51,163 nt of DNA from Bigelowiella natans CCMP2755 (lineage: Eukaryota > Protista > Cercozoa): the NCBI GenBank assembly GCA_000320545.1, contig ADNK01003417.1, positions 1 to 51,163 on the forward strand, in the 5' to 3' direction. The notes below the pieces were generated by a model. The model saw only the letters and a program-made list of their open reading frames with translations. It did no database searches and was not told the DNA's origin. A program made the translations under genes and the position numbers. This document shows, in pieces, positions 11,151 to 27,010 of this stretch; position 1 is the stretch's first letter; each line of letters opens with the position of its first letter.

Positions 11151-11471
11151 TCTGGAGAGCCCAAAGCGAGAAGAGGCTTGTGGTAATTGTCACGGCATCA
11201 CCAAAATTTGTTGTTGTTGTTTTTATTTTCAATTAAAGAATGAGTAGATCCAACAAAGGCCGGCACTTGAAATCACATCTCGAGTTTCTAGTTCTCAAAA
11301 CGACCTTGCAGCTATTTGTGTTGAATGCTGCTCCTTTACTCTTTCTTCCAATAGACAATACTTCCCACAGATAGACATATTTTATGGGAAGTCAAAAAAC
11401 TTAGCGCTACTACTGTTCTTTTCATGCGAAGTCCCTGAGTGTACCTAACTACTATCAAAAGGCTTTGAATC

Positions 11472-12918
11472 ATGGGGCTTGCCTGCTCCAGTGGGACACC
11501 GGTCCAGGAGGAAATTGTTTCTGTGCGCCACCAGGACGTTAGAGACGAGTTTGGAAAATGGATTAAAGCTGAGATAACACCGCTCGAAAACCGCAAAGTT
11601 TCTGTGCACTTCGAAGGCTGGGATGCTAAGTGGTAACATGCGAATTCTTCCATTTTCCTAGCTAACCGACACATCTCCTTCTCCTAATCGGGCCTACCTG
11701 TCCGATAAACCTTCTCATTGCACCTCTATTGAAAAATCAGGGATTGTATAATGGATCTTGATAAAGACAGGGAAGAATTCGCCCCATATGGAAGATACAG
11801 CACCAAAGCAGGTCCGTCCTTGTCTTATTTCTGTCTACCAGATTGACTCCAACATACGCACATTGGCTCCGAGTATCAATGAAATCTGACGGTTCTCTTT
11901 TTGTTTTCAAAGCGGACACAACAAAGTATAGAGAGGGGGACAGGGTGCAAGTGCTGCAGCGGCGTCCTCAGAAACTAAACGAATGGGTCGACGCTGAAGT
12001 CGATACCGTGGAAGGCGCTGAGGTAGTTTTTTTTATGTGCGAGAAGTCTTGAAAGATTATGAAATGTGAATGCTTACGTTTCGAACCTAGGTTCGGGTGA
12101 AATATCACGTAAGGGGCCATAGGAAGCAGTTCCAGTACTGGTATCATGTCAATCGAGCAGAAATCAAGAAACCCTCGGAGGATTACTTCGGATCATCGAA
12201 GCGTTACCGATCAACGGAGGAGAGCAGTCAACCTCGCACCAGGAACCTAGATCGCACGCGGGACGAAGACTATGACGAAGTAGATATGATCCCACCCGAA
12301 AGAGAATTCGGCGGTCGGGCCATGGGTGGCCGTGGAGGGGGCGGCGGCAGCGGTTTCAAAAAGGACGGAAAACTGTGCTGCGACAAATGTAACAAGCCAC
12401 ACCTGACGGAGGACTGCCCTACTTACCGAAAAGCTCGTCCGAAGCATAAGGATGCATGGGTGAATCTGGGGAAAAAACCCATAGAAATGGGTTCAAGCGG
12501 TGGCAACGTGAAAACGTTTTCCGCTCATGTCGTGCGCCAACCCGGGGATGGGAACTGCCTTTTTCATTCGTTATCTCACGGATTAAGGTCTAACGCATCA
12601 ACTCTTCGGAGGAAAATATGCTCCTTTATTCTCAACAACCCCGGCCTTGATATTGGCGGCGACACGATAAAGGAATGGGTCCATTATGATAAAGGCTGCT
12701 CCGTCTCTCGCTACGTTGATAGAATGTCTCGAAACGGCTGCTGGGGTGGCGGTATTGAGATTGCAGCGTGCGCGCACATGGCTGGCGTCAACGTCCATGT
12801 GTGGGAGCGTGGATGGGGGTATCACAAAAGGATAAGTTGTTTTGATGTAAAGAACGCCACAAAGACTATAAATGTGGTGTATCAGGGTCGTATGCATTAC
12901 GATGCTTTAGTTCTTTAA
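11472..12918 (+). CDS. OTU-family deubiquitinase with two Tudor/chromo-barrel-like domains and a CX2CX3HX4C zinc-knuckle-like motif; 4 exons
   Basis: MGLACSS start; 'DVRDEFGKWIKAEI..VSVHFEGWDAKWD..FAPYGRY' Tudor/MBT-like barrel; second barrel 'GDRVQV..EWVDAEVD..VRVKY'; CDKCNKPHLTEDC; OTU motifs PGDGNCLFHSL, WGGGIEI, HYDALV. Confidence 0.85.
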
Positions 12919-14206: not shown

Positions 14207-15076
14207 CTAATTTATGTACGTCGACATGCGACGGCAATGAGACGAATTCAAATCCTGAATGCAGAACAAAATACACCTGATATGCTGACAAAGCGCGTAA
14301 ATGATCATGTGGATATTCAACCTTTAAAGCTGTTTCAAGCTGACTGCCAAACTGCTTCAGAACCGCAAAATCACACTGCATCAGTTCTGATTTCTCCTTC
14401 ACTCCTATAATTATTATTTTTGCGATTATGGATGGAGCTTCACTTCTCTAAACTTTGGGAATCGTGACACTAACCATCGTCTGTCTCAATTTCGAGAAGG
14501 AATGAGGGCCTTATTTCATGATGAAGACTGCGGCTGGACATCTGTTAGTATCGAGAGTGGGAGAAAGCATACAACCAATTCAAACAGGATAAACCGATTT
14601 ATGATAAAAATAATGTCGTGTGAGCGCGCGCGCGCGCGTGTGTGTGTTTGTGTGTGCTCTATTTTCTTGCTGGCGAGCACCTCAAGTTCCAATCGCCAAT
14701 TCAAGCTTTTATAGTGCGGAAGCCTCTTCGAGTTCTTTGAGAGCATTCCACGAATGTTTTCGACGTTCGCAACATAGAACTTTAAGAGGAGGGGGGAGGA
14801 AGAGTTGCTGGTTAAGTTCTTATACGTATGCATTCAATAAGCACACGTGCGCAAAGAGGCTCTTCCTCTCCGCAGACATGCATGCGATAAAGAACACGGA
14901 AGAAAAAGATTTGCAAAAAAGAACCAGCGAGGGAGGGGAAACTAAAGCGGAAAATTGCATTCGCTCCAGGTAGAATCACCTCATACAGTATCGTAAATTA
15001 GTTATGAAGTCGCAGTAGAATCACCTCATACAGAATCGTCGGGTAACCATCTGGTAGCTTCAAAGTCTACAAAAAA

Positions 15077-15125
<49 letters not shown>

Positions 15126-15442
15126 CGATTTCGTCATTGAAAGTCTGGCCATAATAACAACATGTTCCGGCGCATTATTGGTCTTGACCTTGGCTATGAT
15201 GTTAAAGTTCGACTGGCTGAGCTGCTTCTTACAACATGCGAGAAAGAACCCAGACAAGCCTTCAACCACAGCACCAACATCTGCAGTAGACATTCCGAGC
15301 TCTTCTGTAAATTTATGGAATTTATCGATAAGAGTAGATTTGTGTAGTGTGCATATGTACCCACCCGTCGGCATATGACAAAAGGCACGAGCATAAATAC
15401 ACATGGACATGTACACAATGTGCTCTCCTACCCTTTCTCCCT

Positions 15443-15531
<89 letters not shown>

Positions 15532-15902
15532 TCAGTTAGTCTCGTTGTGATTGTACGTGGATGTGTGTAAGTGTGTTTGTTGTGTGTTTTGTGTGTATGA
15601 ATTCGTGAAAGAAAGCATATCTGAGTCTTCACACACACACAAACGAACACAGATTTTGTGAAAAATATCAAAATCTTCTTACTTGCAGTTCGAGAAAACA
15701 ATTTTTTGTCTGTTCCAGAAGCTTTGAAGTTGTGAATGCAAAGCTCACAGCATTTTTTCAGCTGCTTTCCATCGATCTGCGGGGCAGGGAGGCGGCAACA
15801 AATCACACCATGCAAGAGCACGAAAACAGCTTGTTACTGAGATCCTAAGTCGTGCACCTTGGTAAGGGCCTCAAGATCCACAGACTCGATGAGAACAGAC
15901 AT
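14207..15902 (-). CDS. COMMD2: COMM domain-containing protein 2 (Commander/CCC complex), multi-exon
   Basis: Spliced product includes VEGLSGFFLACCK, LPHYKSLNWRLELE, SSRSLHHEIRPSFLL, QCDFAVLKQFGSQLETALK-DLNSSHCRRMSTYIN*. These match COMMD2 LPSYHNLEWRLDV/ASRSLRQQIKP/HCRR.. Confidence 0.88.
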
Positions 15903-19332: not shown

Positions 19333-19624
19333 GACGAACAATGGCATCATGGAGTGACTTCATCACGATGCGGACTTTTTGCCCACGCCACGGTACCCAG
19401 TCGATCATTGCGTGAAAGCTGATGCACACAACATCACATTTTCCAATTTGCTAATGTCTTCATTCTAGCTGCTCATCGAACAGCGGCCCCATCGCATGGG
19501 CAGATGTGGGCATCACAAATTCACGCTAACAAATCAGTACGTGTACCAAGTGCTAGCTGGCGGTACGCAGGGCCGCTGTGAAAGGCGAACCATGTGATCT
19601 AGTGATGTGCAAATGTGCACATGT

Positions 19625-19897
19625 GGCATTGCACAAATTGCAGCTTGCCGCAAAAAGCGCGGCGTCGCTTGCGTGCAGATGAATGATTGTCGTGAGCACA
19701 CAGCCACAGCCAGTTGATTGCGCACGCGCACTTTCCAATCGCGCGCATTTGCATGCATTGCGCACGATGCACGTGTTCCAGCACACATGCTGCTGCGTGG
19801 ACGTGCAGTCTTGGCGCACACATGCGCACGTGTGCTGCACTGCACGCACACGCGTTCCAATGATGCGCGCACGCACGTGTCAACACGTCAATTGTTG
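19625..19897 (-). repeat. Dispersed repeat, inverted copy of ~26165-26545; TpA-free
   Basis: CAAATTGCAGCTTGCCGCAAAAAGCGCGGCGTCGC and GATGCGCGCACGCACGTGTCAACACGTCAATTGTTG are exact reverse complements of segments at ~26502-26536 and ~26165-26200. Confidence 0.9.
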
Positions 19898-20505
19898 CGC
19901 AGATTTTGCAACACAACGCTCACATTGTTCGATGGAAAAAGTCAATCGTGCAATGCAGCTGAGTGCATTGACTGCATGCCTACTAGATGCGTGTGTCGCG
20001 TTTTGCGCGTCTGCACGTGCACGTCAATGATTTGACGTGTCATGGTGTCATGTGCATGCTTTGACAGAGATTGCTGTCTTGCTCTGTCTGCCCTTGCATC
20101 ATTTGCGTGCATTGCGAATTCACCCCAGCTTGGTTTTTTGATCCAGTGATCAGTCTCACACGCACGCAACAAACACCTTCAACACAATTACAACACTGAA
20201 TTCCCCAAGCTGTGCATTTGGATAGAGCGGAGCTACGTCGAGGGTTTTTGTTCCCTGGACTGGCTAATCGCAGAGCTAATGACGACCTAGTTTCACGAGC
20301 TACAGATTTCACAAAGCAGCAGTCTCTCCCCGAGCCCGCCCCACATTCATTTCACCACTGCTTTCCCATTGTTGAGGAAGAGGGGGAAGGAAAACTCAAA
20401 GATGCCTTTCCACAGATCACCAAACTATTCGACTAGTTTCCGTATTTTGCAACAACGACGGTAAAAACGGTAAAAACGGTAAAAACGCCAATGGGGTGTT
20501 CCTTA

Positions 20506-20725
20506 TTACTCGACAGTTGCACGGTCCCCTTCAACACGCTCCAAAACCTCTCCAGTCTTATAATAAAGATGTTGTCCAAAGCACACAAATCAGAAGTATA
20601 ACCACCACCAGCAGCAGCAGCAGTAGTAGTAGTAGTAGTAGTAGCGACAGCAGCAGAAGCATACTTGCAACACGTACACACCGTAAACACACACACGCAC
20701 ACACATACACAGTTTGATGTATTAT

Positions 20726-20779
<54 letters not shown>

Positions 20780-21190
20780 ATTATTGTTAATCAACCCCAT
20801 GTATTCATTACGACTATGCATCGACATGAGAAATAAATACATGCGTAGTTCTTACTTCATTGCGGCAGTAAAAGACCCTGCCAATATCTATATAGTCCCC
20901 ATCATCAAGTACATTGTCCAGGTATTCCTTGAGCTGTTTCGGAGACACCTTGTACCTAGGCAATACAGCAATTCAAGTGTTGAACGGAAGGAGACACACA
21001 CACATACACACACACACACATACACCTAGACGCGCAGAGAGAGGGAGGGAGAGAGAGAGGGAGATAGATAATAACTTTGCAAACATTATGACACAGTACT
21101 CTTGTGGCTCTTCAAGGACAATGTTCACTGGGGGAGGGTTGGGGGACTTGCACCTTGGGGCGGGTACTCGTAGCCATCGAGGTATCCGGT
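20506..21190 (-). CDS. Possible small spliced gene or gene remnant of unknown function
   Basis: AG/GTAAG-bounded exon ~20856-20956 encodes YKVSPKQLKEYLDNVLDDGDYIDIGRVFYCRNE and is flanked by microsatellite-rich intron-like DNA; a plausible last exon is TGEVLERVEGDRATVE*. Start not identifiable. Confidence 0.35.
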
Positions 21191-21214
21191 AAGCGAATTG
21201 GCGCGAAATAATTT

Positions 21215-21258
21215 TGAAATTTGAAAAATTCAGGAATTCCTGAATTTTTCAAATTTCA
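21215..21258. repeat. Perfect 44-bp palindrome
   Basis: TGAAATTTGAAAAATTCAGGAA|TTCCTGAATTTTTCAAATTTCA. Confidence 0.95.
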
Positions 21259-21415
21259 CGATGAACTACTAAAATAAATTAAGGTTATTCACTTTTAATG
21301 AATAGTTCATCGAAAATGCTGACAAAATAATTACAAATTTGGTTCCAAATGAATGTCGCACACACTCAAAGGCATGCATTAAATGCCTCATGATGCTGCA
21401 CAAGTTGTGGTCTAT

Positions 21416-21890
21416 GACCCGTTCCACGCAAATACAAACTGACCAACCAACTGACCAACCACCTTCGATATCACCTAATTTAATTTATTTTATTTTCGAA
21501 GCGCCTTTTTATGAAGACTGACCAACCAAAGTTTGAAAAGTGACCAGTTTTACAACTTCAAACCGACCAGTCGGAACTGACCAGTGTTGTCATGTTGTTG
21601 TCTGGTGCAAAATAAGAAAAAATCCAAAAACAACATGATTTTTCTCGTTATGTCATCTCACGCACATCATGCTGATGTCAAACCGAACAACATGTGCAAA
21701 ATATGAGAAAGTCAAAAATTGTATGGCAAAACATAGCAAAATTTTTGTTGGTCAGATTGGTTGGTCAGTCAGTTTTGTATTTGCGTGGAACGAGCAAAAA
21801 TCCATGAAAATCAACATCCAAAATCACCAAAAAAAAACCAACGCAGATTGGTTGGTCGGTTGGTCAGTTTGTATTTGCGTGGAACGGGTC
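21416..21890. mobile_element. Non-autonomous TIR element (MITE), ~475 bp
   Basis: 33-bp perfect TIR GACCCGTTCCACGCAAATACAAACTGACCAACC / GGTTGGTCAGTTTGTATTTGCGTGGAACGGGTC. Flanking direct repeat is TAT (or TCTATGA if the TIR starts at CCC). Multiple internal TGACCA repeats; extra right-end copy at ~21746-21792. Confidence 0.9.
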
Positions 21891-22195
21891 TATGATCAAT
21901 GTAGATCTGTAGATCTAGATCTAGAAATGAAATGTGTTTGTTGCTATTAATAGGGTACCCTAATAGTAATGTTGAGTAGCAACCCGCACATTGCGCAAAT
22001 AGCCACGTTGCGTGGCACTTTATTTGACCCCATTTGTGCCTAATCTGTCCCGAAAGTTGCCCTTGCGATTGAATAAAGGTGTTTAAGATGATGTCGTAGT
22101 ACTAAAATAGTATCTAATTTATGTTTTAAATAATAAATGTGTCCCTTCTTGATATGAAATTTGACAGAGTCGTAGATTTCATCTGCTACGTCAAG

Positions 22196-24361
22196 ATGAT
22201 CCAGCGCTTCATCTTCCTCTTCCTCACTGTTGTCTGTGCAGGGCAACCTTTCTCTATTTTTTTCGGAAACTCGAACCCGGCATTTCCATACTACACGGAA
22301 AAATGCACACAAGTTGATGACGCCTACATTTGCCTTACACAAACGTCGAGTTCATACCAAGTGCACAAAATTTTAAAGCTCAACCTAACTACCATGGTGA
22401 CTACCGAGCAAGATCTAACCAACAACATCGCAGTAGAGGACGCCTCAAATCGAGTTTATGGGCAGTGTGTGTATCATGATGACGGCTTCTTGTATTGCCC
22501 AAGGGATACGAGCCTGGGTTCCGGCTTTGACCTGCTGAGAGTTGAACTTCACAACATAAGCAGCTACACACGCCTTACTGGAGACGGATTGACAATATTA
22601 AACATTCAACAAGGTCAAAGTCCGGTGACCTCAACTCCTTACACAGCATGTGTATCATCCCCAGGCAGAGGAGTTTACTGCCTCCCGGACAAAGGCGGTT
22701 TCGTCATAAAGGCAAATGCAACCCATTTTTGGCCCATCACCGGAGACACTTCCGGGGATACTAACTGGGTGAGCACCAACTACGTCACGGGCCAATGCTT
22801 TCTCGCGGGCACAAACGTGGTCTGTTCACCAAGAAAGAATTACTACACCGTGAAAATCGACACAGTGACTGATCAAGTAACGTGGGGGAATCAAAGTTTC
22901 CTGACTTTACTTGGCTTTTCCCATGGCAATTATATAACCCAATACTGCGTCCCGGTGAACAAGACCAGCGGTGAAATTGCCTACTGCATTTCAGGGCAAC
23001 AAACTGCAGTATTGGCTGTTTGGTCTCTCTATGGTGATGGAAGCGTCTCTGTGATCTATGATACAGGCTCGGTGCTGGGAAATAATTATGCAATAAGGAC
23101 CTGCTGTAAAGGATCAACGAATGCGACCACCATTTATTGCTTGCCTTCTGGCATAACGGACGGCTTCTTCCTGAAGATTGAAACTTTGACCGATCAAGTG
23201 TCAAATTTTACCAGCTCAATTAGCTCCCCACAATCCCGGAATTGCGCAGGATATAATGGCTACATTTACGCTGTACACAGTTCCGGTAGAAACGATCAGC
23301 CGTTCATCCTAGACACTTCTAATGACAGTACGACATATCCTGGCTACAGCGGTACCATATCTTCTTCAACTGTGCGATGGAGAGCGACGCCTGCTCTGTA
23401 CAATGGCTTCATTTACTTCCCTCCTGGGAAAGGTGAGATGGGTGGCTTTTCAATGTTCGAGGTTGTGTCTACCTCCAGCCCTGCTACGGCCAGCCCTGCT
23501 ACGGCCAGCCCCACTACAGTGAGCCCCACAGCCAGCCCTGCTACTGCGAGCCCTACGGCCAGCCCTGCTACGGCCAGCCCCGCTACAGTGAGCCCCACAG
23601 CCAGCCCTGCTACTGCGAGCCCTGCTACAGTGAGCCCCACAGCCAGCCCTGCTACAGTGAGCCCCACAGCCAGCCCTGCTACAGTGAACCCCACCGCGAA
23701 CCCCACAGCCAGCCCTACTACAGGGAGCCCCACATCCAGCCCTGCTACAGTGAGCCCCACCGCGAACCCCACTACCGCGAACCCCACTACCGTGAACCCT
23801 ACTACCGTTTCGCCCACTAGTAGCCCCACCGATAACAATCTACCTCATGACATTGAAGTCGATGTGGAGGTTTTGTTCCCCAGCGTGGTGATATCTGCTC
23901 TCACAAGCAATCAAAGAAGTCAATTCAGCACCAGCGTGAGGCAGGCAGTTGCGGTGTTCACCAGAATGTCGATTCGAAGGGTCACCGTTCTGAGCATGAG
24001 AACCGGAAGCACCATTGTTGTTCTCAAGACGATGTTTCCTGATGCCGAGGAAGCTGTGCGATATGAAAATGCCGTGGAAGACCGGCCTCGAGATGTTTGG
24101 AACAGCACTCATGGATTCGACAACACCAATTACGGGTATCCAGGAAGCGGGCGTGTTTTGCGTGCAAGCGACGATGATGACGAAGCTTCAGACACAAGCA
24201 CGATTGTTGGTGCAGTCCTCGGTGTTTTCTTTGCTCTTGTCATCGCTGCTGTTGTCTGGTACATGTGCTGCAAGAAGAAGAATGCAGAAACAGAAGGCAC
24301 TCCCGTTGTTGATGCGTCCCTCGCAAACGCCATCAGCATGAAGCCAGTGACTCGCATCTGA
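22196..24361 (+). CDS. Intronless type-I membrane surface protein: signal peptide, Cys-containing propeller-like repeats, Ser/Pro/Thr mucin-like stalk, SEA-like domain, TM, short tail
   Basis: MIQRFIFLFLTVVCAG signal; ~7 repeats ending GFLYCPR/GVYCLP/NVVCSP/IAYCIS/IYCLPS/YIYAVH/FIYFPP; (ASPAT/VSPT/ANPT)n; TM IVGAVLGVFFALVIAAVVWYMCC followed by KKK. Confidence 0.85.
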   Translation: MIQRFIFLFLTVVCAGQPFSIFFGNSNPAFPYYTEKCTQVDDAYICLTQTSSSYQVHKILKLNLTTMVTTEQDLTNNIAVEDASNRVYGQCVYHDDGFLYCPRDTSLGSGFDLLRVELHNISSYTRLTGDGLTILNIQQGQSPVTSTPYTACVSSPGRGVYCLPDKGGFVIKANATHFWPITGDTSGDTNWVSTNYVTGQCFLAGTNVVCSPRKNYYTVKIDTVTDQVTWGNQSFLTLLGFSHGNYITQYCVPVNKTSGEIAYCISGQQTAVLAVWSLYGDGSVSVIYDTGSVLGNNYAIRTCCKGSTNATTIYCLPSGITDGFFLKIETLTDQVSNFTSSISSPQSRNCAGYNGYIYAVHSSGRNDQPFILDTSNDSTTYPGYSGTISSSTVRWRATPALYNGFIYFPPGKGEMGGFSMFEVVSTSSPATASPATASPTTVSPTASPATASPTASPATASPATVSPTASPATASPATVSPTASPATVSPTASPATVNPTANPTASPTTGSPTSSPATVSPTANPTTANPTTVNPTTVSPTSSPTDNNLPHDIEVDVEVLFPSVVISALTSNQRSQFSTSVRQAVAVFTRMSIRRVTVLSMRTGSTIVVLKTMFPDAEEAVRYENAVEDRPRDVWNSTHGFDNTNYGYPGSGRVLRASDDDDEASDTSTIVGAVLGVFFALVIAAVVWYMCCKKKNAETEGTPVVDASLANAISMKPVTRI
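23470..23830 (+). repeat. Coding minisatellite (12/15-bp units) encoding SPT/SPAT repeats
   Basis: Tandem GCCAGCCCTGCTACG/GTGAGCCCCACA units. Confidence 0.95.
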
Positions 24362-24461: not shown

Positions 24462-24572
24462 ATAATAGACACAGTAATAGCATATATAGTATATATATGA
24501 TATTACATGTCTATACTTATAATAGACACAGTAATAGCACATATAGTATACATATGATATTACATGTCTATA
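24462..24572 (+). repeat. 57-bp tandem duplication downstream of the surface-protein gene
   Basis: ATAATAGACACAGTAATAGCA(T/C)ATATAGTATA(T/C)ATATGATATTACATGTCTATA occurs twice. Confidence 0.9.
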
Positions 24573-24727: not shown

Positions 24728-25020
24728 CCTAGAGCCCTGTGTGCACACAACGCATGCATGGACTCCATGTGTAACATGTGCACATTTAGGCTCTTGGCGT
24801 ACGGTCCTAAAACACAGATGTTCTCTAGGACATGTGTGCTCAAGTTCATGTGTGCTAAACAACATCTGTGATTTAGGAGCATGCACACTTTAGTCAACAT
24901 GTTTGCTTTGGTACACGTGTGGAAAACTCACATGTTGAATTGGCGGGTACGCCTAGAGCCCCACATGCATGCAATGCACATGGACTCTGTGCATGATGTG
25001 TGCACATTTGGGCTCTTGGC
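24728..25020 (+). mobile_element. Two degenerate copies (24728-24802, 24947-25020) of a ~75-bp mini TIR element
   Basis: Both read CCTAGAGCCC..ATGGACTC..CACATTT(A/G)GGCTCTTGGC; the ends GTACGCCTAGAGCC and GGCTCTTGGCGTAC are near-perfect inverted repeats. Confidence 0.7.
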
Positions 25021-25379
25021 AATTTTGTGAATCATTTTTTGTTGTGACATGTGTTCATGTCAATTGCATCTCCATGTGATGGCCATGCAAGTGATGTGCA
25101 TGTGACATGCATGTGCATCACTTTGCTGTGTCCATTGTGATGGACGTGCTGTGCAATGTGACATACATGTGACTGCACATGCACCACGTTGCTGTGTCTG
25201 TCATCCATTTGTCATTTTCATGCAATGATCACAGCCGAGACACAAATCTGGAAATGCCAGTCTGATGAATCAGAAAATGCCTTGCAAATCGTCAATTGAT
25301 TTTTTTTGACTTCTGAATGCAAAGGCTTGCGCCGGGAAGACAGGTGCTTTTGCACTTGATTGTCAAACGCAGATCACGA

Positions 25380-25918
25380 AGCTTGTTGCCGTGAGATGAT
25401 TTGAAGCTTTTCGCGAACGAATGCAAGCAATGCACTCTCGGATCACACTGCGCACGCCATCGACTGCGCAACAGCTGTTGCATGGTTTTGCGCTCTTGCT
25501 TGTGTTGCGCGGATCCTGACACGTTGTCATGCGCGGCTCAAGCCTCTGCTGGGTCAACGAGGCACATCCCGCTGCCACCGGTGACATCCCCATCGTTCGT
25601 ACGGAGCCGGGTCAGGCGGGGAGCGCGCGCATTGCTAGATTGGTGGGGATGGTGCCTGCAGGTGCAGGCAGAACCTTAAATGCATTGCTCCGCGGACAAA
25701 ACCGCGCAACAAACAAGTGCCTGCCGCCGACCGCGAGAACAATGTGCACGGAGTGCGGCGGCACGCGTGCAATCGCAGAGAACGTGTTCTCCAGGGTTGA
25801 ATCCTGGGCGGTGATGACCTCGTTGAGGCATCGCCGTGACTTTCAAGACATTTCTGCTGGCCTGATTTTCCAATTCACTCAGGTGGATGCAGAACGTCGT
25901 GAAGCTCATGCACGCTGA
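25380..25918 (+). pseudogene. Decayed PIF/Harbinger/ISL2EU-type (IS5-like, DDE_Tnp_4) transposase catalytic domain with frameshifts
   Basis: Across frames: WVNEAHPAATGDIPIVR (cf. W.NGP.P....D..I.R), IGGDGACRCRQNLKCIAPRTKPRNKQVPAADRENN (cf. GD.AY......P..KP....L......N), RAIAENVFSRVESWAVMTSLRH (cf. R...E..F.R.K.W..L...RH). Motif order is correct. Confidence 0.75.
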
Positions 25919-26164
25919 TTGTGTTCGGCATGCTTTTGCAGGTCAAAAACGTTTTCAGATCTGTGAGGGCTGGTGTTCGCAACCAGCCCGGGATCAAGCG
26001 CAGCTTGGACGTGGCCCGCTGGCCCGGGCCACTTGCTCCGTGCCACGTGCAATTCCCGCTGCAAAGTCCAGGCTAGCAGGGCTGGTCGCAGGACATTGGT
26101 CTTGCAAAAGCAGCCGAAACGCAACAAAACCGTCACTTCCGCCCCCCTTGAGCTCCAGGTCACC

Positions 26165-26545
26165 CAACAATTGACGTGTTGACACGTGCGTGCGCGCATC
26201 ATCGGAACAACGCGTGAGCGTGCAGGCTGCAGCACACGTGCGCATGTGCGCCAAGACTGCACGTCCACACAGCAGGATGTGCACACATGTGAGTGGTTTC
26301 ATTGCCTTTGAACCACTCGTAGTTCGCGAACTACGAGTGGTTCAAAGGCAAAAACCACTCACAACACAGTGCATCGTGCGCAATGGTGGAAAGTGTGCGC
26401 AGCTGTGCACGCGCGAGCTGATGCGCGTGCGTGCGCAACTGACTTTGCGTGTGTGCTCGCGCACGAGCAATCGTTTGTCTGCATCGCACGCACGCTAGCA
26501 CGCGACGCCGCGCTTTTTGCGGCAAGCTGCAATTTGAGCAATGCT
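26165..26545 (+). repeat. Dispersed repeat, inverted partner of 19625-19897, interrupted by a hairpin insertion
   Basis: Direct reverse-complement comparison by eye; the ~75-bp hairpin at 26288-26363 is absent from the 19.7-kb copy. Confidence 0.88.
26288..26363. mobile_element. ~75-bp foldback mini-element with a 48-bp perfect palindromic core
   Basis: TGTGAGTGGTTT..TGCCTTTGAACCACTCGTAGTTCG|CGAACTACGAGTGGTTCAAAGGCA..AAACCACTCACA. Confidence 0.8.
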
Positions 26546-26552
26546 GTGTGGC

Positions 26553-27010
26553 CACGGCCACCACAGCCAGGCCCTGGCGTGATCTGTGACCCCGGATTTT
26601 CGTTGCAAAATCCACTTTGCGCGCGCTTGCATTTCGATTTTTTCACACGCACGTTGTGTCTGAGTGCGATGTCGGTTGCACGTGGGACCTTCACGTTGCA
26701 CGTTCCACAGTCATTGAGCACTGAACGAATTGTTGCGCTTCAAATTTTTGTGACACCTCTCGGTTTTTTTTCCACACTTGTTCAACATTGGTGACAATTT
26801 CGTCCTTTCAATGTGCATCAAAACCTCAAAAAAGCATGTTTTGACCACACTTTGTCGAAAGTGTGGATTTTTGCAGCCCGCAACCCACTTGTCATGTGTT
26901 TGTGGTCATCACATGTGCGCGCGCTGTGCTGCGCTTGCTGGTCGCCTGCTCGCTCGCATTTGTGATTTCGGACATCCTGATCACGCCAGGGCCTGGCTAT
27001 GGTGGCCGTG
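26553..27010. mobile_element. Non-autonomous TIR element (~458 bp), possibly Tc1/mariner-like with a mutated TA target-site duplication
   Basis: 32-bp inverted repeat CACGGCCACCACAGCCAGGCCCTGGCGTGATC (26553-26584) / GATCACGCCAGGGCCTGGCTATGGTGGCCGTG (26979-27010), one mismatch. Confidence 0.88.

What the first reader, a model, noticed from the sequence alone, without database searches (positions are those of the whole stretch)
25380..25918. Harbinger-type transposase relic with Tyr codons apparently turned into Cys/His
The catalytic-region motif GD.(A/G)Y of DDE_Tnp_4 transposases reads GDGAC here (TGC at 25657-25659, i.e. TAC->TGC). Other likely Tyr positions read C or H: EAHP (CAT 25565-25567), LKCIAP, NECKQCT. 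The recognisable motif segments contain no Tyr. A conserved protein motif polarises the change as TA->TG/CA and shows the process can disable a transposase. The ORF track hides this because the motifs lie in different frames.
Basis: partly seen in the sequence, partly recalled or inferred. Interest (0 to 1): 0.8.

Follow-up and report, generated by a model that had tools for sequence, protein, structure and literature searches.

The report
TpA-erased Harbinger transposase relic in Bigelowiella
This is a dead, truncated copy of a Harbinger-type jumping-gene enzyme in the alga Bigelowiella natans whose tyrosine codons were turned into cysteine or histidine codons by the alga's TpA-specific hypermutation, which a 2026 preprint already describes, so it is a clean example and not a new phenomenon.

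Summary

**The relic.** Window 25543-26128 (+) is a 5'-truncated, frameshifted relic of a PIF/Harbinger (DDE_Tnp_4) transposase.
- It is 56% identical over 126 aa (E=4e-36) to a paralogue in the same genome.
- A profile built only from TpA-normal homologues gives E=5e-24. The out-of-frame GDGAC piece scores E=1e-8 on its own.

**The TpA desert.** The relic lies in a 2-kb stretch (24954-26998) with TpA o/e 0.08, TG and CA o/e 1.7-1.8 and normal CpG.

**The tyrosine sites.** TpA-normal homologues (one B. natans copy and three metagenomic proteins) carry Tyr at GDGA-Y and DPK-Y. The window reads Cys at both. Sister copies read Cys or His in patterns that no single tree of the copies can explain.

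**The clincher.** Two 3.2-kb copies on contig C2929 differ at 85 sites. Of these, 73 are TpA in one copy and TpG (43) or CpA (30) in the other. All 12 Tyr became 6 Cys and 6 His.

**Prior work.** The genome is B. natans (Bigna1). Mettrop et al. (bioRxiv 10.64898/2026.01.13.699255) showed this TpA->TpG/CpA hypermutation experimentally, and their low-TpA lists name PF13359 and two close paralogues of this relic. The scan also flagged this stretch (s1-756074) and another TpA desert (s1-741611) before.

The parts
25541..25604 (+). Transposase relic, first piece (frame of 25529): S-L-C-W-V-N-E-A-H-P-A-A-T-G-D..., with the His codon CAT at 25565-25567. DNA homology to paralogues starts at 25543, so the relic is 5'-truncated here.
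25606..25743 (+). Transposase relic, middle piece, shifted into the frame of 25639 by a 1-bp deletion after 25604. It holds G-D-G-A-C (TGC 25657-25659) and K-C-I-A-P (TGC 25681-25683), a TAG stop at 25636-25638 and an 18-bp deletion after 25641.
   Evidence: 25639-25797 scores E=1.4e-8 on its own
25748..25882 (+). Transposase relic, third piece, back in the frame of 25529 after a 4-bp insertion at 25743-25746. It holds the conserved R-x-I-A-E-N-V-F-S-R-V block, inferred to carry the catalytic Glu.
25883..25941 (+). Relic of the 59-nt GT..AG intron that precedes the last exon. The 129-aa ORF of the ORF list runs on into it and stops at TGA 25916-25918.
   Evidence: sequence compared with the spliced models P0004/P0002
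25942..26128 (+). Relic of the last coding exon (V-K-N-V-F-R-S-V-R...), broken by 8-bp insertions at 26012-26019 and 26069-26076. The second is an X4-CTAG-X4 scar.
   Evidence: E=9e-4
26165..26546 (+). 3' non-coding end of the same Harbinger family (matches C891, C2101, C2540 and C194), interrupted by a palindromic ~75-nt repeat at 26288-26363 that matches many loci on both strands.
24954..26998 (.). TpA desert: 9 TpA, o/e 0.08; TG 1.70, CA 1.78, CpG 0.98. It is a composite of several repeat fragments.
26547..26998 (+). Separate ~450-bp MITE-like element with terminal inverted repeats; 15 or more copies in the genome at 79-90% identity, all TpA-poor inside normal flanks.
19626..20130 (-). Second, inverted fragment of the same Harbinger family (3' end plus the C-terminal coding tail), lying in the second TpA desert 19600-20189 (TpA o/e 0.09).

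Best explanation
The stretch is the 3' half of a PIF/Harbinger DNA transposon of Bigelowiella natans. It contains the C-terminal ~125 residues of the DDE_Tnp_4 transposase, a short intron, the last exon and the 3' non-coding end. After insertion it was hit by the host's TpA-specific A:T->G:C hypermutation. Each TpA becomes TpG when the A of the top strand is changed, or CpA when the A of the bottom strand is changed. Both Tyr codons (TAT, TAC) contain TpA, so saturation necessarily turns every Tyr into Cys (TGY) or His (CAY). It also turns ATA Ile into Met or Thr, and GTA Val into Ala or leaves it silent. It removes TAA and TAG stops, so erased copies keep long open frames although they are damaged. 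Each copy of the family was erased independently after the copies separated. Shown here: the homology, the TpA erasure, its polarity and its copy-by-copy independence. Taken from the preprint: that the process runs in real time at about 6e-7 per site per generation. Inferred only: the enzyme (a DNA adenine deaminase such as the ADAT2-like Bn78255 that the authors propose) and how loci are chosen.
For: Genome identity: the C2101 open frame is 100% identical to jgi Bigna1 137242. Homology of the relic. [quoted passage not shown] Of the 15 PF13359 loci, the 12 fetched as loci, plus C2540 (L016), are TpA-free with normal flanks where flanks were captured. Tyr test: at 12 columns where at least 2 of 4 TpA-normal homologues have Tyr, the erased copies read His 23 times, Cys 18 times and Tyr once. 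The window reads Cys at both of the all-Tyr columns it covers. Independence: at the ancestral TpA sites, all three possible 2:2 splits of the four close copies occur. CA/TG is by far the commonest adjacent double mismatch between copies: 42, 31 and 18, against 3 or fewer for any other class. Direct polarity: C2929 copy A (77 TpA, 12 Tyr) versus copy B (3 TpA, 0 Tyr) has 85 mismatches; 73 are TpA->TpG (43) or CpA (30), and all 15 amino-acid replacements fall in TpA codons. Experiment: 230 of 231 new mutations in the hypermutable regions are A->G or T->C, all at TpA. The preprint's supplement lists PF13359 and the models 137242 and 73733 among low-TpA CDS.
Against: Pfam itself gives no hit on the separate window pieces, so membership rests on transitive homology. 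At the EAHP site the TpA-normal B. natans copy has a native His. In the MITE family next door most TG/CA states are shared by all copies, and the commonest polymorphism is CpG<->CpA/TpG. So not all TpA-poverty there arose after insertion, and a second mutation process may contribute. Copy A has TpA o/e of only 0.45, so 'unmutated' is relative. No data show that this particular locus mutated in the published lines.
Confidence: 0.9

Rival explanations
1. The family is natively TpA-free through its own codon usage or a foreign origin, and Cys/His at these sites is the family's normal state.
For: Open-frame relatives of 210-527 aa read GDGA-C/H and have 0 Tyr. The MITE copies share most of their TG/CA states.
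Against: A TpA-normal copy of the same family exists in the same genome with Tyr at all these sites, and external homologues have Tyr with TpA o/e 0.5-0.7. Close copies alternate TG and CA at the same dinucleotide in mutually incompatible patterns. Open frames are uninformative, because without TpA only TGA stops remain.
Confidence: 0.03
2. The TG/CA excess comes from 5-methylcytosine deamination of CpG (CG->TG/CA), as in methylated repeats of plants and animals.
For: TG/CA swaps at one dinucleotide could in principle come from an ancestral CpG as well as from TpA. CpG<->CpA/TpG polymorphisms are frequent in the MITE alignment.
Against: CpG o/e is 0.98-1.07 in the desert while TpA is 0.08. Copy A has TpA, not CpG, at 73 of the sites that differ. 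The outgroup proteins have Tyr (TAY), not Arg (CGN), at those columns.
Confidence: 0.03
3. The resemblance to DDE_Tnp_4 is a chance or compositional match in Cys/His-rich, stop-poor sequence.
For: There is no Pfam hit on the pieces. TpA-free DNA gives spurious long ORFs and many weak cross-frame hits.
Against: E=4e-36, 3e-21 and 5e-24 with composition-based statistics or an HMM built from TpA-normal proteins. DNA identity to three PF13359-positive copies is 81-83% over 585 bp. All other window segments score E>=1.
Confidence: 0.01
4. The changes arose by ADAR-like editing of transcripts that were then copied back into DNA.
For: The U-A preference of ADAR resembles the TpA context, as the preprint notes.
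Against: Harbinger is a cut-and-paste DNA element. Introns and non-coding ends are erased as thoroughly as exons. Single-copy integrated viral DNA mutates in place in the experiment.
Confidence: 0.03

Closest known systems
TpA->TpG/CpA hypermutation of integrated foreign DNA in Bigelowiella natans (Mettrop et al., bioRxiv 10.64898/2026.01.13.699255)
   Same: Same organism, same dinucleotide target and same products. The composition signature passes their cluster thresholds. Their supplement lists PF13359 and two close paralogues of this relic (Bigna1 137242 and 73733) among low-TpA CDS.
   Different: They measured it on two viral insertions and called transposons only potential targets. They do not mention Harbinger, tyrosine or copy comparisons. 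Added here: the Tyr->Cys/His read-out, independent erasure of each copy, and a spared/erased copy pair.
PIF/Harbinger transposases (Pfam PF13359, DDE_Tnp_4)
   Same: Homologous C-terminal half of the DDE domain, with the GDxxY-type block and the R-x-x-x-E-N-x-F block. An external homologue has the usual companion Myb-like gene.
   Different: The window copy lacks the N-terminal half with the first catalytic Asp, is frameshifted, has a stop codon and has no Tyr.
Repeat-induced point mutation (RIP) of fungi
   Same: Dinucleotide-specific transition hypermutation that is confined to repeats and foreign DNA and leaves flanks untouched.
   Different: The polarity is opposite: RIP makes TpA from CpA, while this process destroys TpA. 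RIP creates stop codons, while this process removes them. Here one of two near-identical neighbouring copies is spared, which is not expected for homology-triggered RIP.

Membership tests
PIF/Harbinger transposase (PF13359 DDE_Tnp_4) | Significant sequence similarity to proteins that carry the PF13359 domain | tested here: met
   tblastn E=4e-36 (C2101 copy = Bigna1 137242, PF13359) and E=3e-21 (P0006). Custom HMM built from TpA-normal members: E=5e-24, 1e-8 and 9e-4 for the three pieces.
PIF/Harbinger transposase (PF13359 DDE_Tnp_4) | Direct match of the window's own translation to the Pfam model above its cut-off | tested here: not met
   No family at E<=10 for six stop-free pieces. The closest copies score 43.9-44.6 bits against a cut-off of 24.8. 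The failure is attributed to fragmentation and erasure.
PIF/Harbinger transposase (PF13359 DDE_Tnp_4) | Complete DDE catalytic triad | tested here: not met
   Homology starts at residue ~197 of the 324-aa C2101 frame, downstream of the V-D-A-T-D block. Only the second Asp region and the Glu block remain. The assignment of catalytic residues is from general knowledge of the family, not tested here.
PIF/Harbinger transposase (PF13359 DDE_Tnp_4) | Terminal inverted repeats, 3-bp TWA target duplication and a companion Myb-like ORF | not tested
   The 5' end is missing in the window. A Myb-like gene was seen only next to the external homologue L060.
B. natans TpA hypermutation tracts (Mettrop et al. 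2026) | [quoted passage not shown] | tested here: met
   For 25001-27000, TpA is 0.07-0.10 and TG/CA 1.63-1.78. Only two consecutive 1-kb windows pass, so their three-window rule would miss this desert.
B. natans TpA hypermutation tracts (Mettrop et al. 2026) | Changes are A:T->G:C and fall on TpA | tested here: met
   C2929 pair: 80 of 85 mismatches are A>G or T>C, 73 of them at TpA. Tyr in TpA-normal homologues corresponds to Cys/His in erased copies.
B. natans TpA hypermutation tracts (Mettrop et al. 2026) | Same organism | tested here: met
   100% identity of a G000 open frame to jgi Bigna1 137242.
B. natans TpA hypermutation tracts (Mettrop et al. 2026) | Elevated mutation rate at this locus in mutation-accumulation lines | not testable with these tools
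   This needs their read data. Few targets remain here in any case (9 TpA).
Fungal RIP | C->T at CpA, giving TpA excess | tested here: not met
   TpA o/e is 0.08 and CA/TG are in excess. The polarity is opposite.
CpG methylation decay | CpG depletion accompanying TG/CA excess | tested here: not met
   CpG o/e is 0.98-1.07.

The most novel reading that the evidence does not exclude
Targeting may be locus-selective rather than homology-driven. On contig C2929 two inverted copies lie 5.4 kb apart and are 99.6% identical outside TpA sites. One has lost 73 of its 77 TpA. The other keeps them, including TpAs whose loss would be silent, so protein-level selection cannot explain the sparing. That would point to an epigenetic or territorial trigger, or to bursts. 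It would also mean that a Tyr-bearing, possibly still competent master copy can sit inside a 15-kb TpA desert. In addition, TpA-erased MITEs appear to have kept amplifying, so erasure may silence autonomous elements without stopping non-autonomous ones.
Probability: 0.3. Interest if true: 0.6.

Novelty: already known. Interest (0 to 1): 0.4.

Why it matters
The mutation process was discovered by experiment on two viral insertions, and its authors left transposons as 'potential' targets. This relic and its family give independent evolutionary evidence that transposons are routine targets.

- The tyrosine columns of a conserved enzyme polarise the change without any experiment.
- Alternation of Cys and His between sister copies shows that each copy was hit separately after insertion.
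- One spared/erased copy pair isolates the spectrum almost perfectly.

There is also a practical point for annotation. Erased DNA cannot encode Tyr and has lost two of its three stop codons. It therefore yields long, Cys/His-rich pseudo-ORFs that gene callers report as proteins. Several Bigna1 models are of this kind.

Tried and rejected
- **Pfam on six separate window pieces** found nothing at E<=10. I relied instead on homology to PF13359-bearing proteins and on a custom HMM.
- **Open reading frames as a sign of intact relatives** were rejected. TpA-free DNA lacks TAA and TAG, and both strands of these loci carry 200-500-aa frames.
- **The MITE family as a second polarity test** was inconclusive. 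Most TG/CA states are shared by all copies, and the commonest polymorphisms are CA/CG, AT/GT and CG/TG.
- **A search for the 5' half of the transposase** elsewhere in the window found only a second 3' fragment at about 19.6-20.1 kb.
- **NECKQCT as part of the relic** was rejected because it lies upstream of the homology boundary.
- **The stretch 24954-25543** gave only short, low-copy matches. I did not identify it.
- **The large representative-protein search, structure prediction and fold search** were not used, because the family was already settled.

Full report
**What is there**

TGC at 25657-25659 closes G-D-G-A-C in the frame of 25639. CAT at 25565-25567 is the His of E-A-H-P in the frame of 25529. 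TGC at 25681-25683 is the Cys of K-C-I-A-P.

The stretch lies in a 2-kb TpA desert, 24954-26998:
- It has 9 TpA where the rest of the window predicts 103 (Poisson P=8e-33).
- TpA o/e is 0.08, TG 1.70, CA 1.78 and CpG 0.98.

**Is it a transposase relic?**

Pfam finds nothing on the separate stop-free pieces. PF13359 does hit 15 places elsewhere in the same 91.4-Mb genome. The open frames at those places match the window strongly:
- 56% identity over 126 aa, E=4e-36, for the C2101 copy.
- 53% for C891, 40% for C2929 and 30% for C1777.

At the DNA level, window 25543-26127 is 81-83% identical to C891, C2540 and C2101.

A word search with the C2101 frame returned five Bigna1 models and three metagenomic proteins, all with PF13359. 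One of the metagenomic proteins matches the window at E=3e-21.

I built a profile from the four TpA-normal homologues only and searched all 1918 stop-free segments of the window. Three segments score, and every other segment has E>=1:

| Segment | E-value |
|---|---|
| 25520-25915 | 5e-24 |
| 25639-25797 (the shifted GDGAC piece) | 1.4e-8 |
| 25903-26073 (last exon) | 9e-4 |

Against its closest paralogues the window copy differs as follows:
- It starts only at 25543, about residue 197 of 324.
- It has a 1-bp deletion after 25604 and a 4-bp insertion at 25743-25746. These explain why the motifs lie in two frames.
- It has an 18-bp deletion after 25641 and a TAG at 25636-25638.
- It has two 8-bp insertions in the last exon.

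A 59-nt GT..AG intron relic lies at 25883-25941. The 129-aa ORF in the ORF list simply reads on into it. N-E-C-K-Q-C-T lies upstream of the homology boundary and is not part of the relic.

**Which genome, and what is known**

The C2101 frame is 100% identical to jgi Bigna1 137242, so the genome is Bigelowiella natans.

A literature search found Mettrop et al., bioRxiv 10.64898/2026.01.13.699255. Their main results:
- In a mutation-accumulation experiment, 231 of 302 new nuclear mutations fell in two integrated viral regions.
- 230 of those 231 were A->G or T->C, and all of these were on TpA.
- 324 low-TpA CDS were enriched for the 'DDE superfamily endonuclease' domain.

Their supplement names PF13359 and lists models 137242 and 73733, which are close paralogues of this relic. 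It does not list 71268. The text does not mention Harbinger, tyrosine or copy comparisons, and it calls transposons potential targets.

**Polarity from the protein**

Both Tyr codons contain TpA, so a TpA-free sequence cannot encode Tyr in any frame. The open frames at the PF13359 loci have 0 Tyr in 210-527 residues, apart from 1-2 Tyr at frame ends in two copies. They carry 16-48 Cys+His.

The four TpA-normal homologues have 12-14 Tyr each. There are 12 alignment columns where at least two of them have Tyr. At those columns the erased copies read His 23 times, Cys 18 times and Tyr once.

The window covers two columns where all four have Tyr, GDGA-Y and DPK-Y, and reads Cys at both.

At E-A-H-P, one outgroup has Tyr and the sister copies read His, His and Cys. 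However, the TpA-normal B. natans copy has a native CAT there. So ex-Tyr is probable for this subfamily, not certain.

**Independence of the copies**

At dinucleotides where the TpA-normal copy has TpA, the four close copies show all three possible 2:2 splits of TG against CA. No single tree explains this.

CA/TG is the dominant adjacent double mismatch between copies. It occurs 42, 31 and 18 times in the three long comparisons, while every other class occurs 3 times or fewer.

**The copy pair**

Protein P0004 (Bigna1 71268) is encoded exactly by C2929:11740-14906 (copy A). An inverted copy B at 20284-23474 aligns to it over 3.16 kb:
- There are 85 mismatches. 80 are A>G or T>C reading from A to B.
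- 73 lie on a TpA of copy A: 43 became TG and 30 became CA.
- Copy A has 77 TpA and copy B has 3.
- In the protein, all 12 Tyr changed, 6 to Cys and 6 to His. There is also 1 Ile->Thr and 2 Val->Ala, and no other replacement in the aligned exons.
- Copy A keeps TpAs whose loss would be silent (GTA, TTA), so it is spared by the process and not merely protected by selection.

A rough calculation from the preprint's numbers (inference, not a tool result): 211 mutations on 6169 TpA over 3132 generations is about 1e-5 per TpA per generation. That would erase 95% of TpAs in about 3e5 generations. The 0.4% divergence outside TpA sites implies millions of generations at 3.5e-10 per site. So time was ample.

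**Rival explanations**

- Native composition is excluded by copy A and by the outgroups, which have TpA o/e 0.5-0.7.
- CpG decay is excluded by the normal CpG and by TpA, not CpG, at the ancestral sites.
- A chance match is excluded by the E-values.
- Transcript editing does not fit a cut-and-paste element whose introns and non-coding ends are erased as thoroughly as its exons.

**Verdict**

What is added here is the Tyr read-out, per-copy independence and the spared/erased pair.

The scan had also flagged this stretch (s1-756074) and another TpA desert (s1-741611) before.

Noticed in passing
G000:C2929:11740-14906 (copy A) and 20284-23474 (copy B); loci L051, L049, L061, L062: Two inverted copies of one Harbinger element lie 5.4 kb apart. 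They are 99.6% identical outside TpA sites, but one keeps 77 TpA and all 12 Tyr while the other has 3 TpA and no Tyr. Copy A sits inside a ~15-kb TpA desert and is flanked by a perfect 542-bp inverted repeat (11197-11738 / 14997-15538).
   Followed up: partly
window 25635, 26073, 26495, 13813, 14098, 19599, 27235, 40871 and others: CTAG flanked by a 4-bp direct repeat, i.e. an 8-bp insertion, is hugely over-represented. It accounts for 164 of 716 CTAG (23%) in 195 kb, against a median of 0.9% for other tetramers. In aligned repeat copies these appear as copy-specific insertions. 45% of the TpA that survive in deserts are CTAG. Earlier notes of this scan describe the same scars, and no paper was found.
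   Followed up: partly
window 26547-26998 and loci L015-L033: A ~450-bp MITE-like family has 15 or more copies that are TpA-poor inside normal flanks. Most TG/CA states are shared by all copies, so the family seems to have amplified after erasure. Its commonest polymorphism is CpG<->CpA/TpG, which hints at a second mutation process.
   Followed up: partly
window 26288-26363: A ~75-nt perfect-hairpin repeat is nested in the Harbinger 3' end. It matches many contigs on both strands at 91-97% identity.
   Followed up: no
window 24463-24571: A dense TA-rich simple repeat lies only ~400 bp from the desert edge and just downstream of the 740-aa Ser/Pro/Thr/Ala-rich membrane protein ORF (22139-24361). 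It is not erased, so the process is sharply local.
   Followed up: no
Bigna1 models 137242, 73733, 131657, 143930 (P0001, P0002, P0003, P0005): These published gene models are translations of TpA-erased transposon copies (0-2 Tyr, many Cys/His). Erased DNA has lost TAA and TAG and so yields long pseudo-ORFs on both strands.
   Followed up: partly
L060 (ENA ERZ893790 contig, 4775 bp): A metagenomic homologue (42% identity) has the classical Harbinger layout, a divergent Myb-like gene next to the DDE_Tnp_4 gene, with normal TpA and 14 Tyr. It is a usable outgroup for this family.
   Followed up: partly
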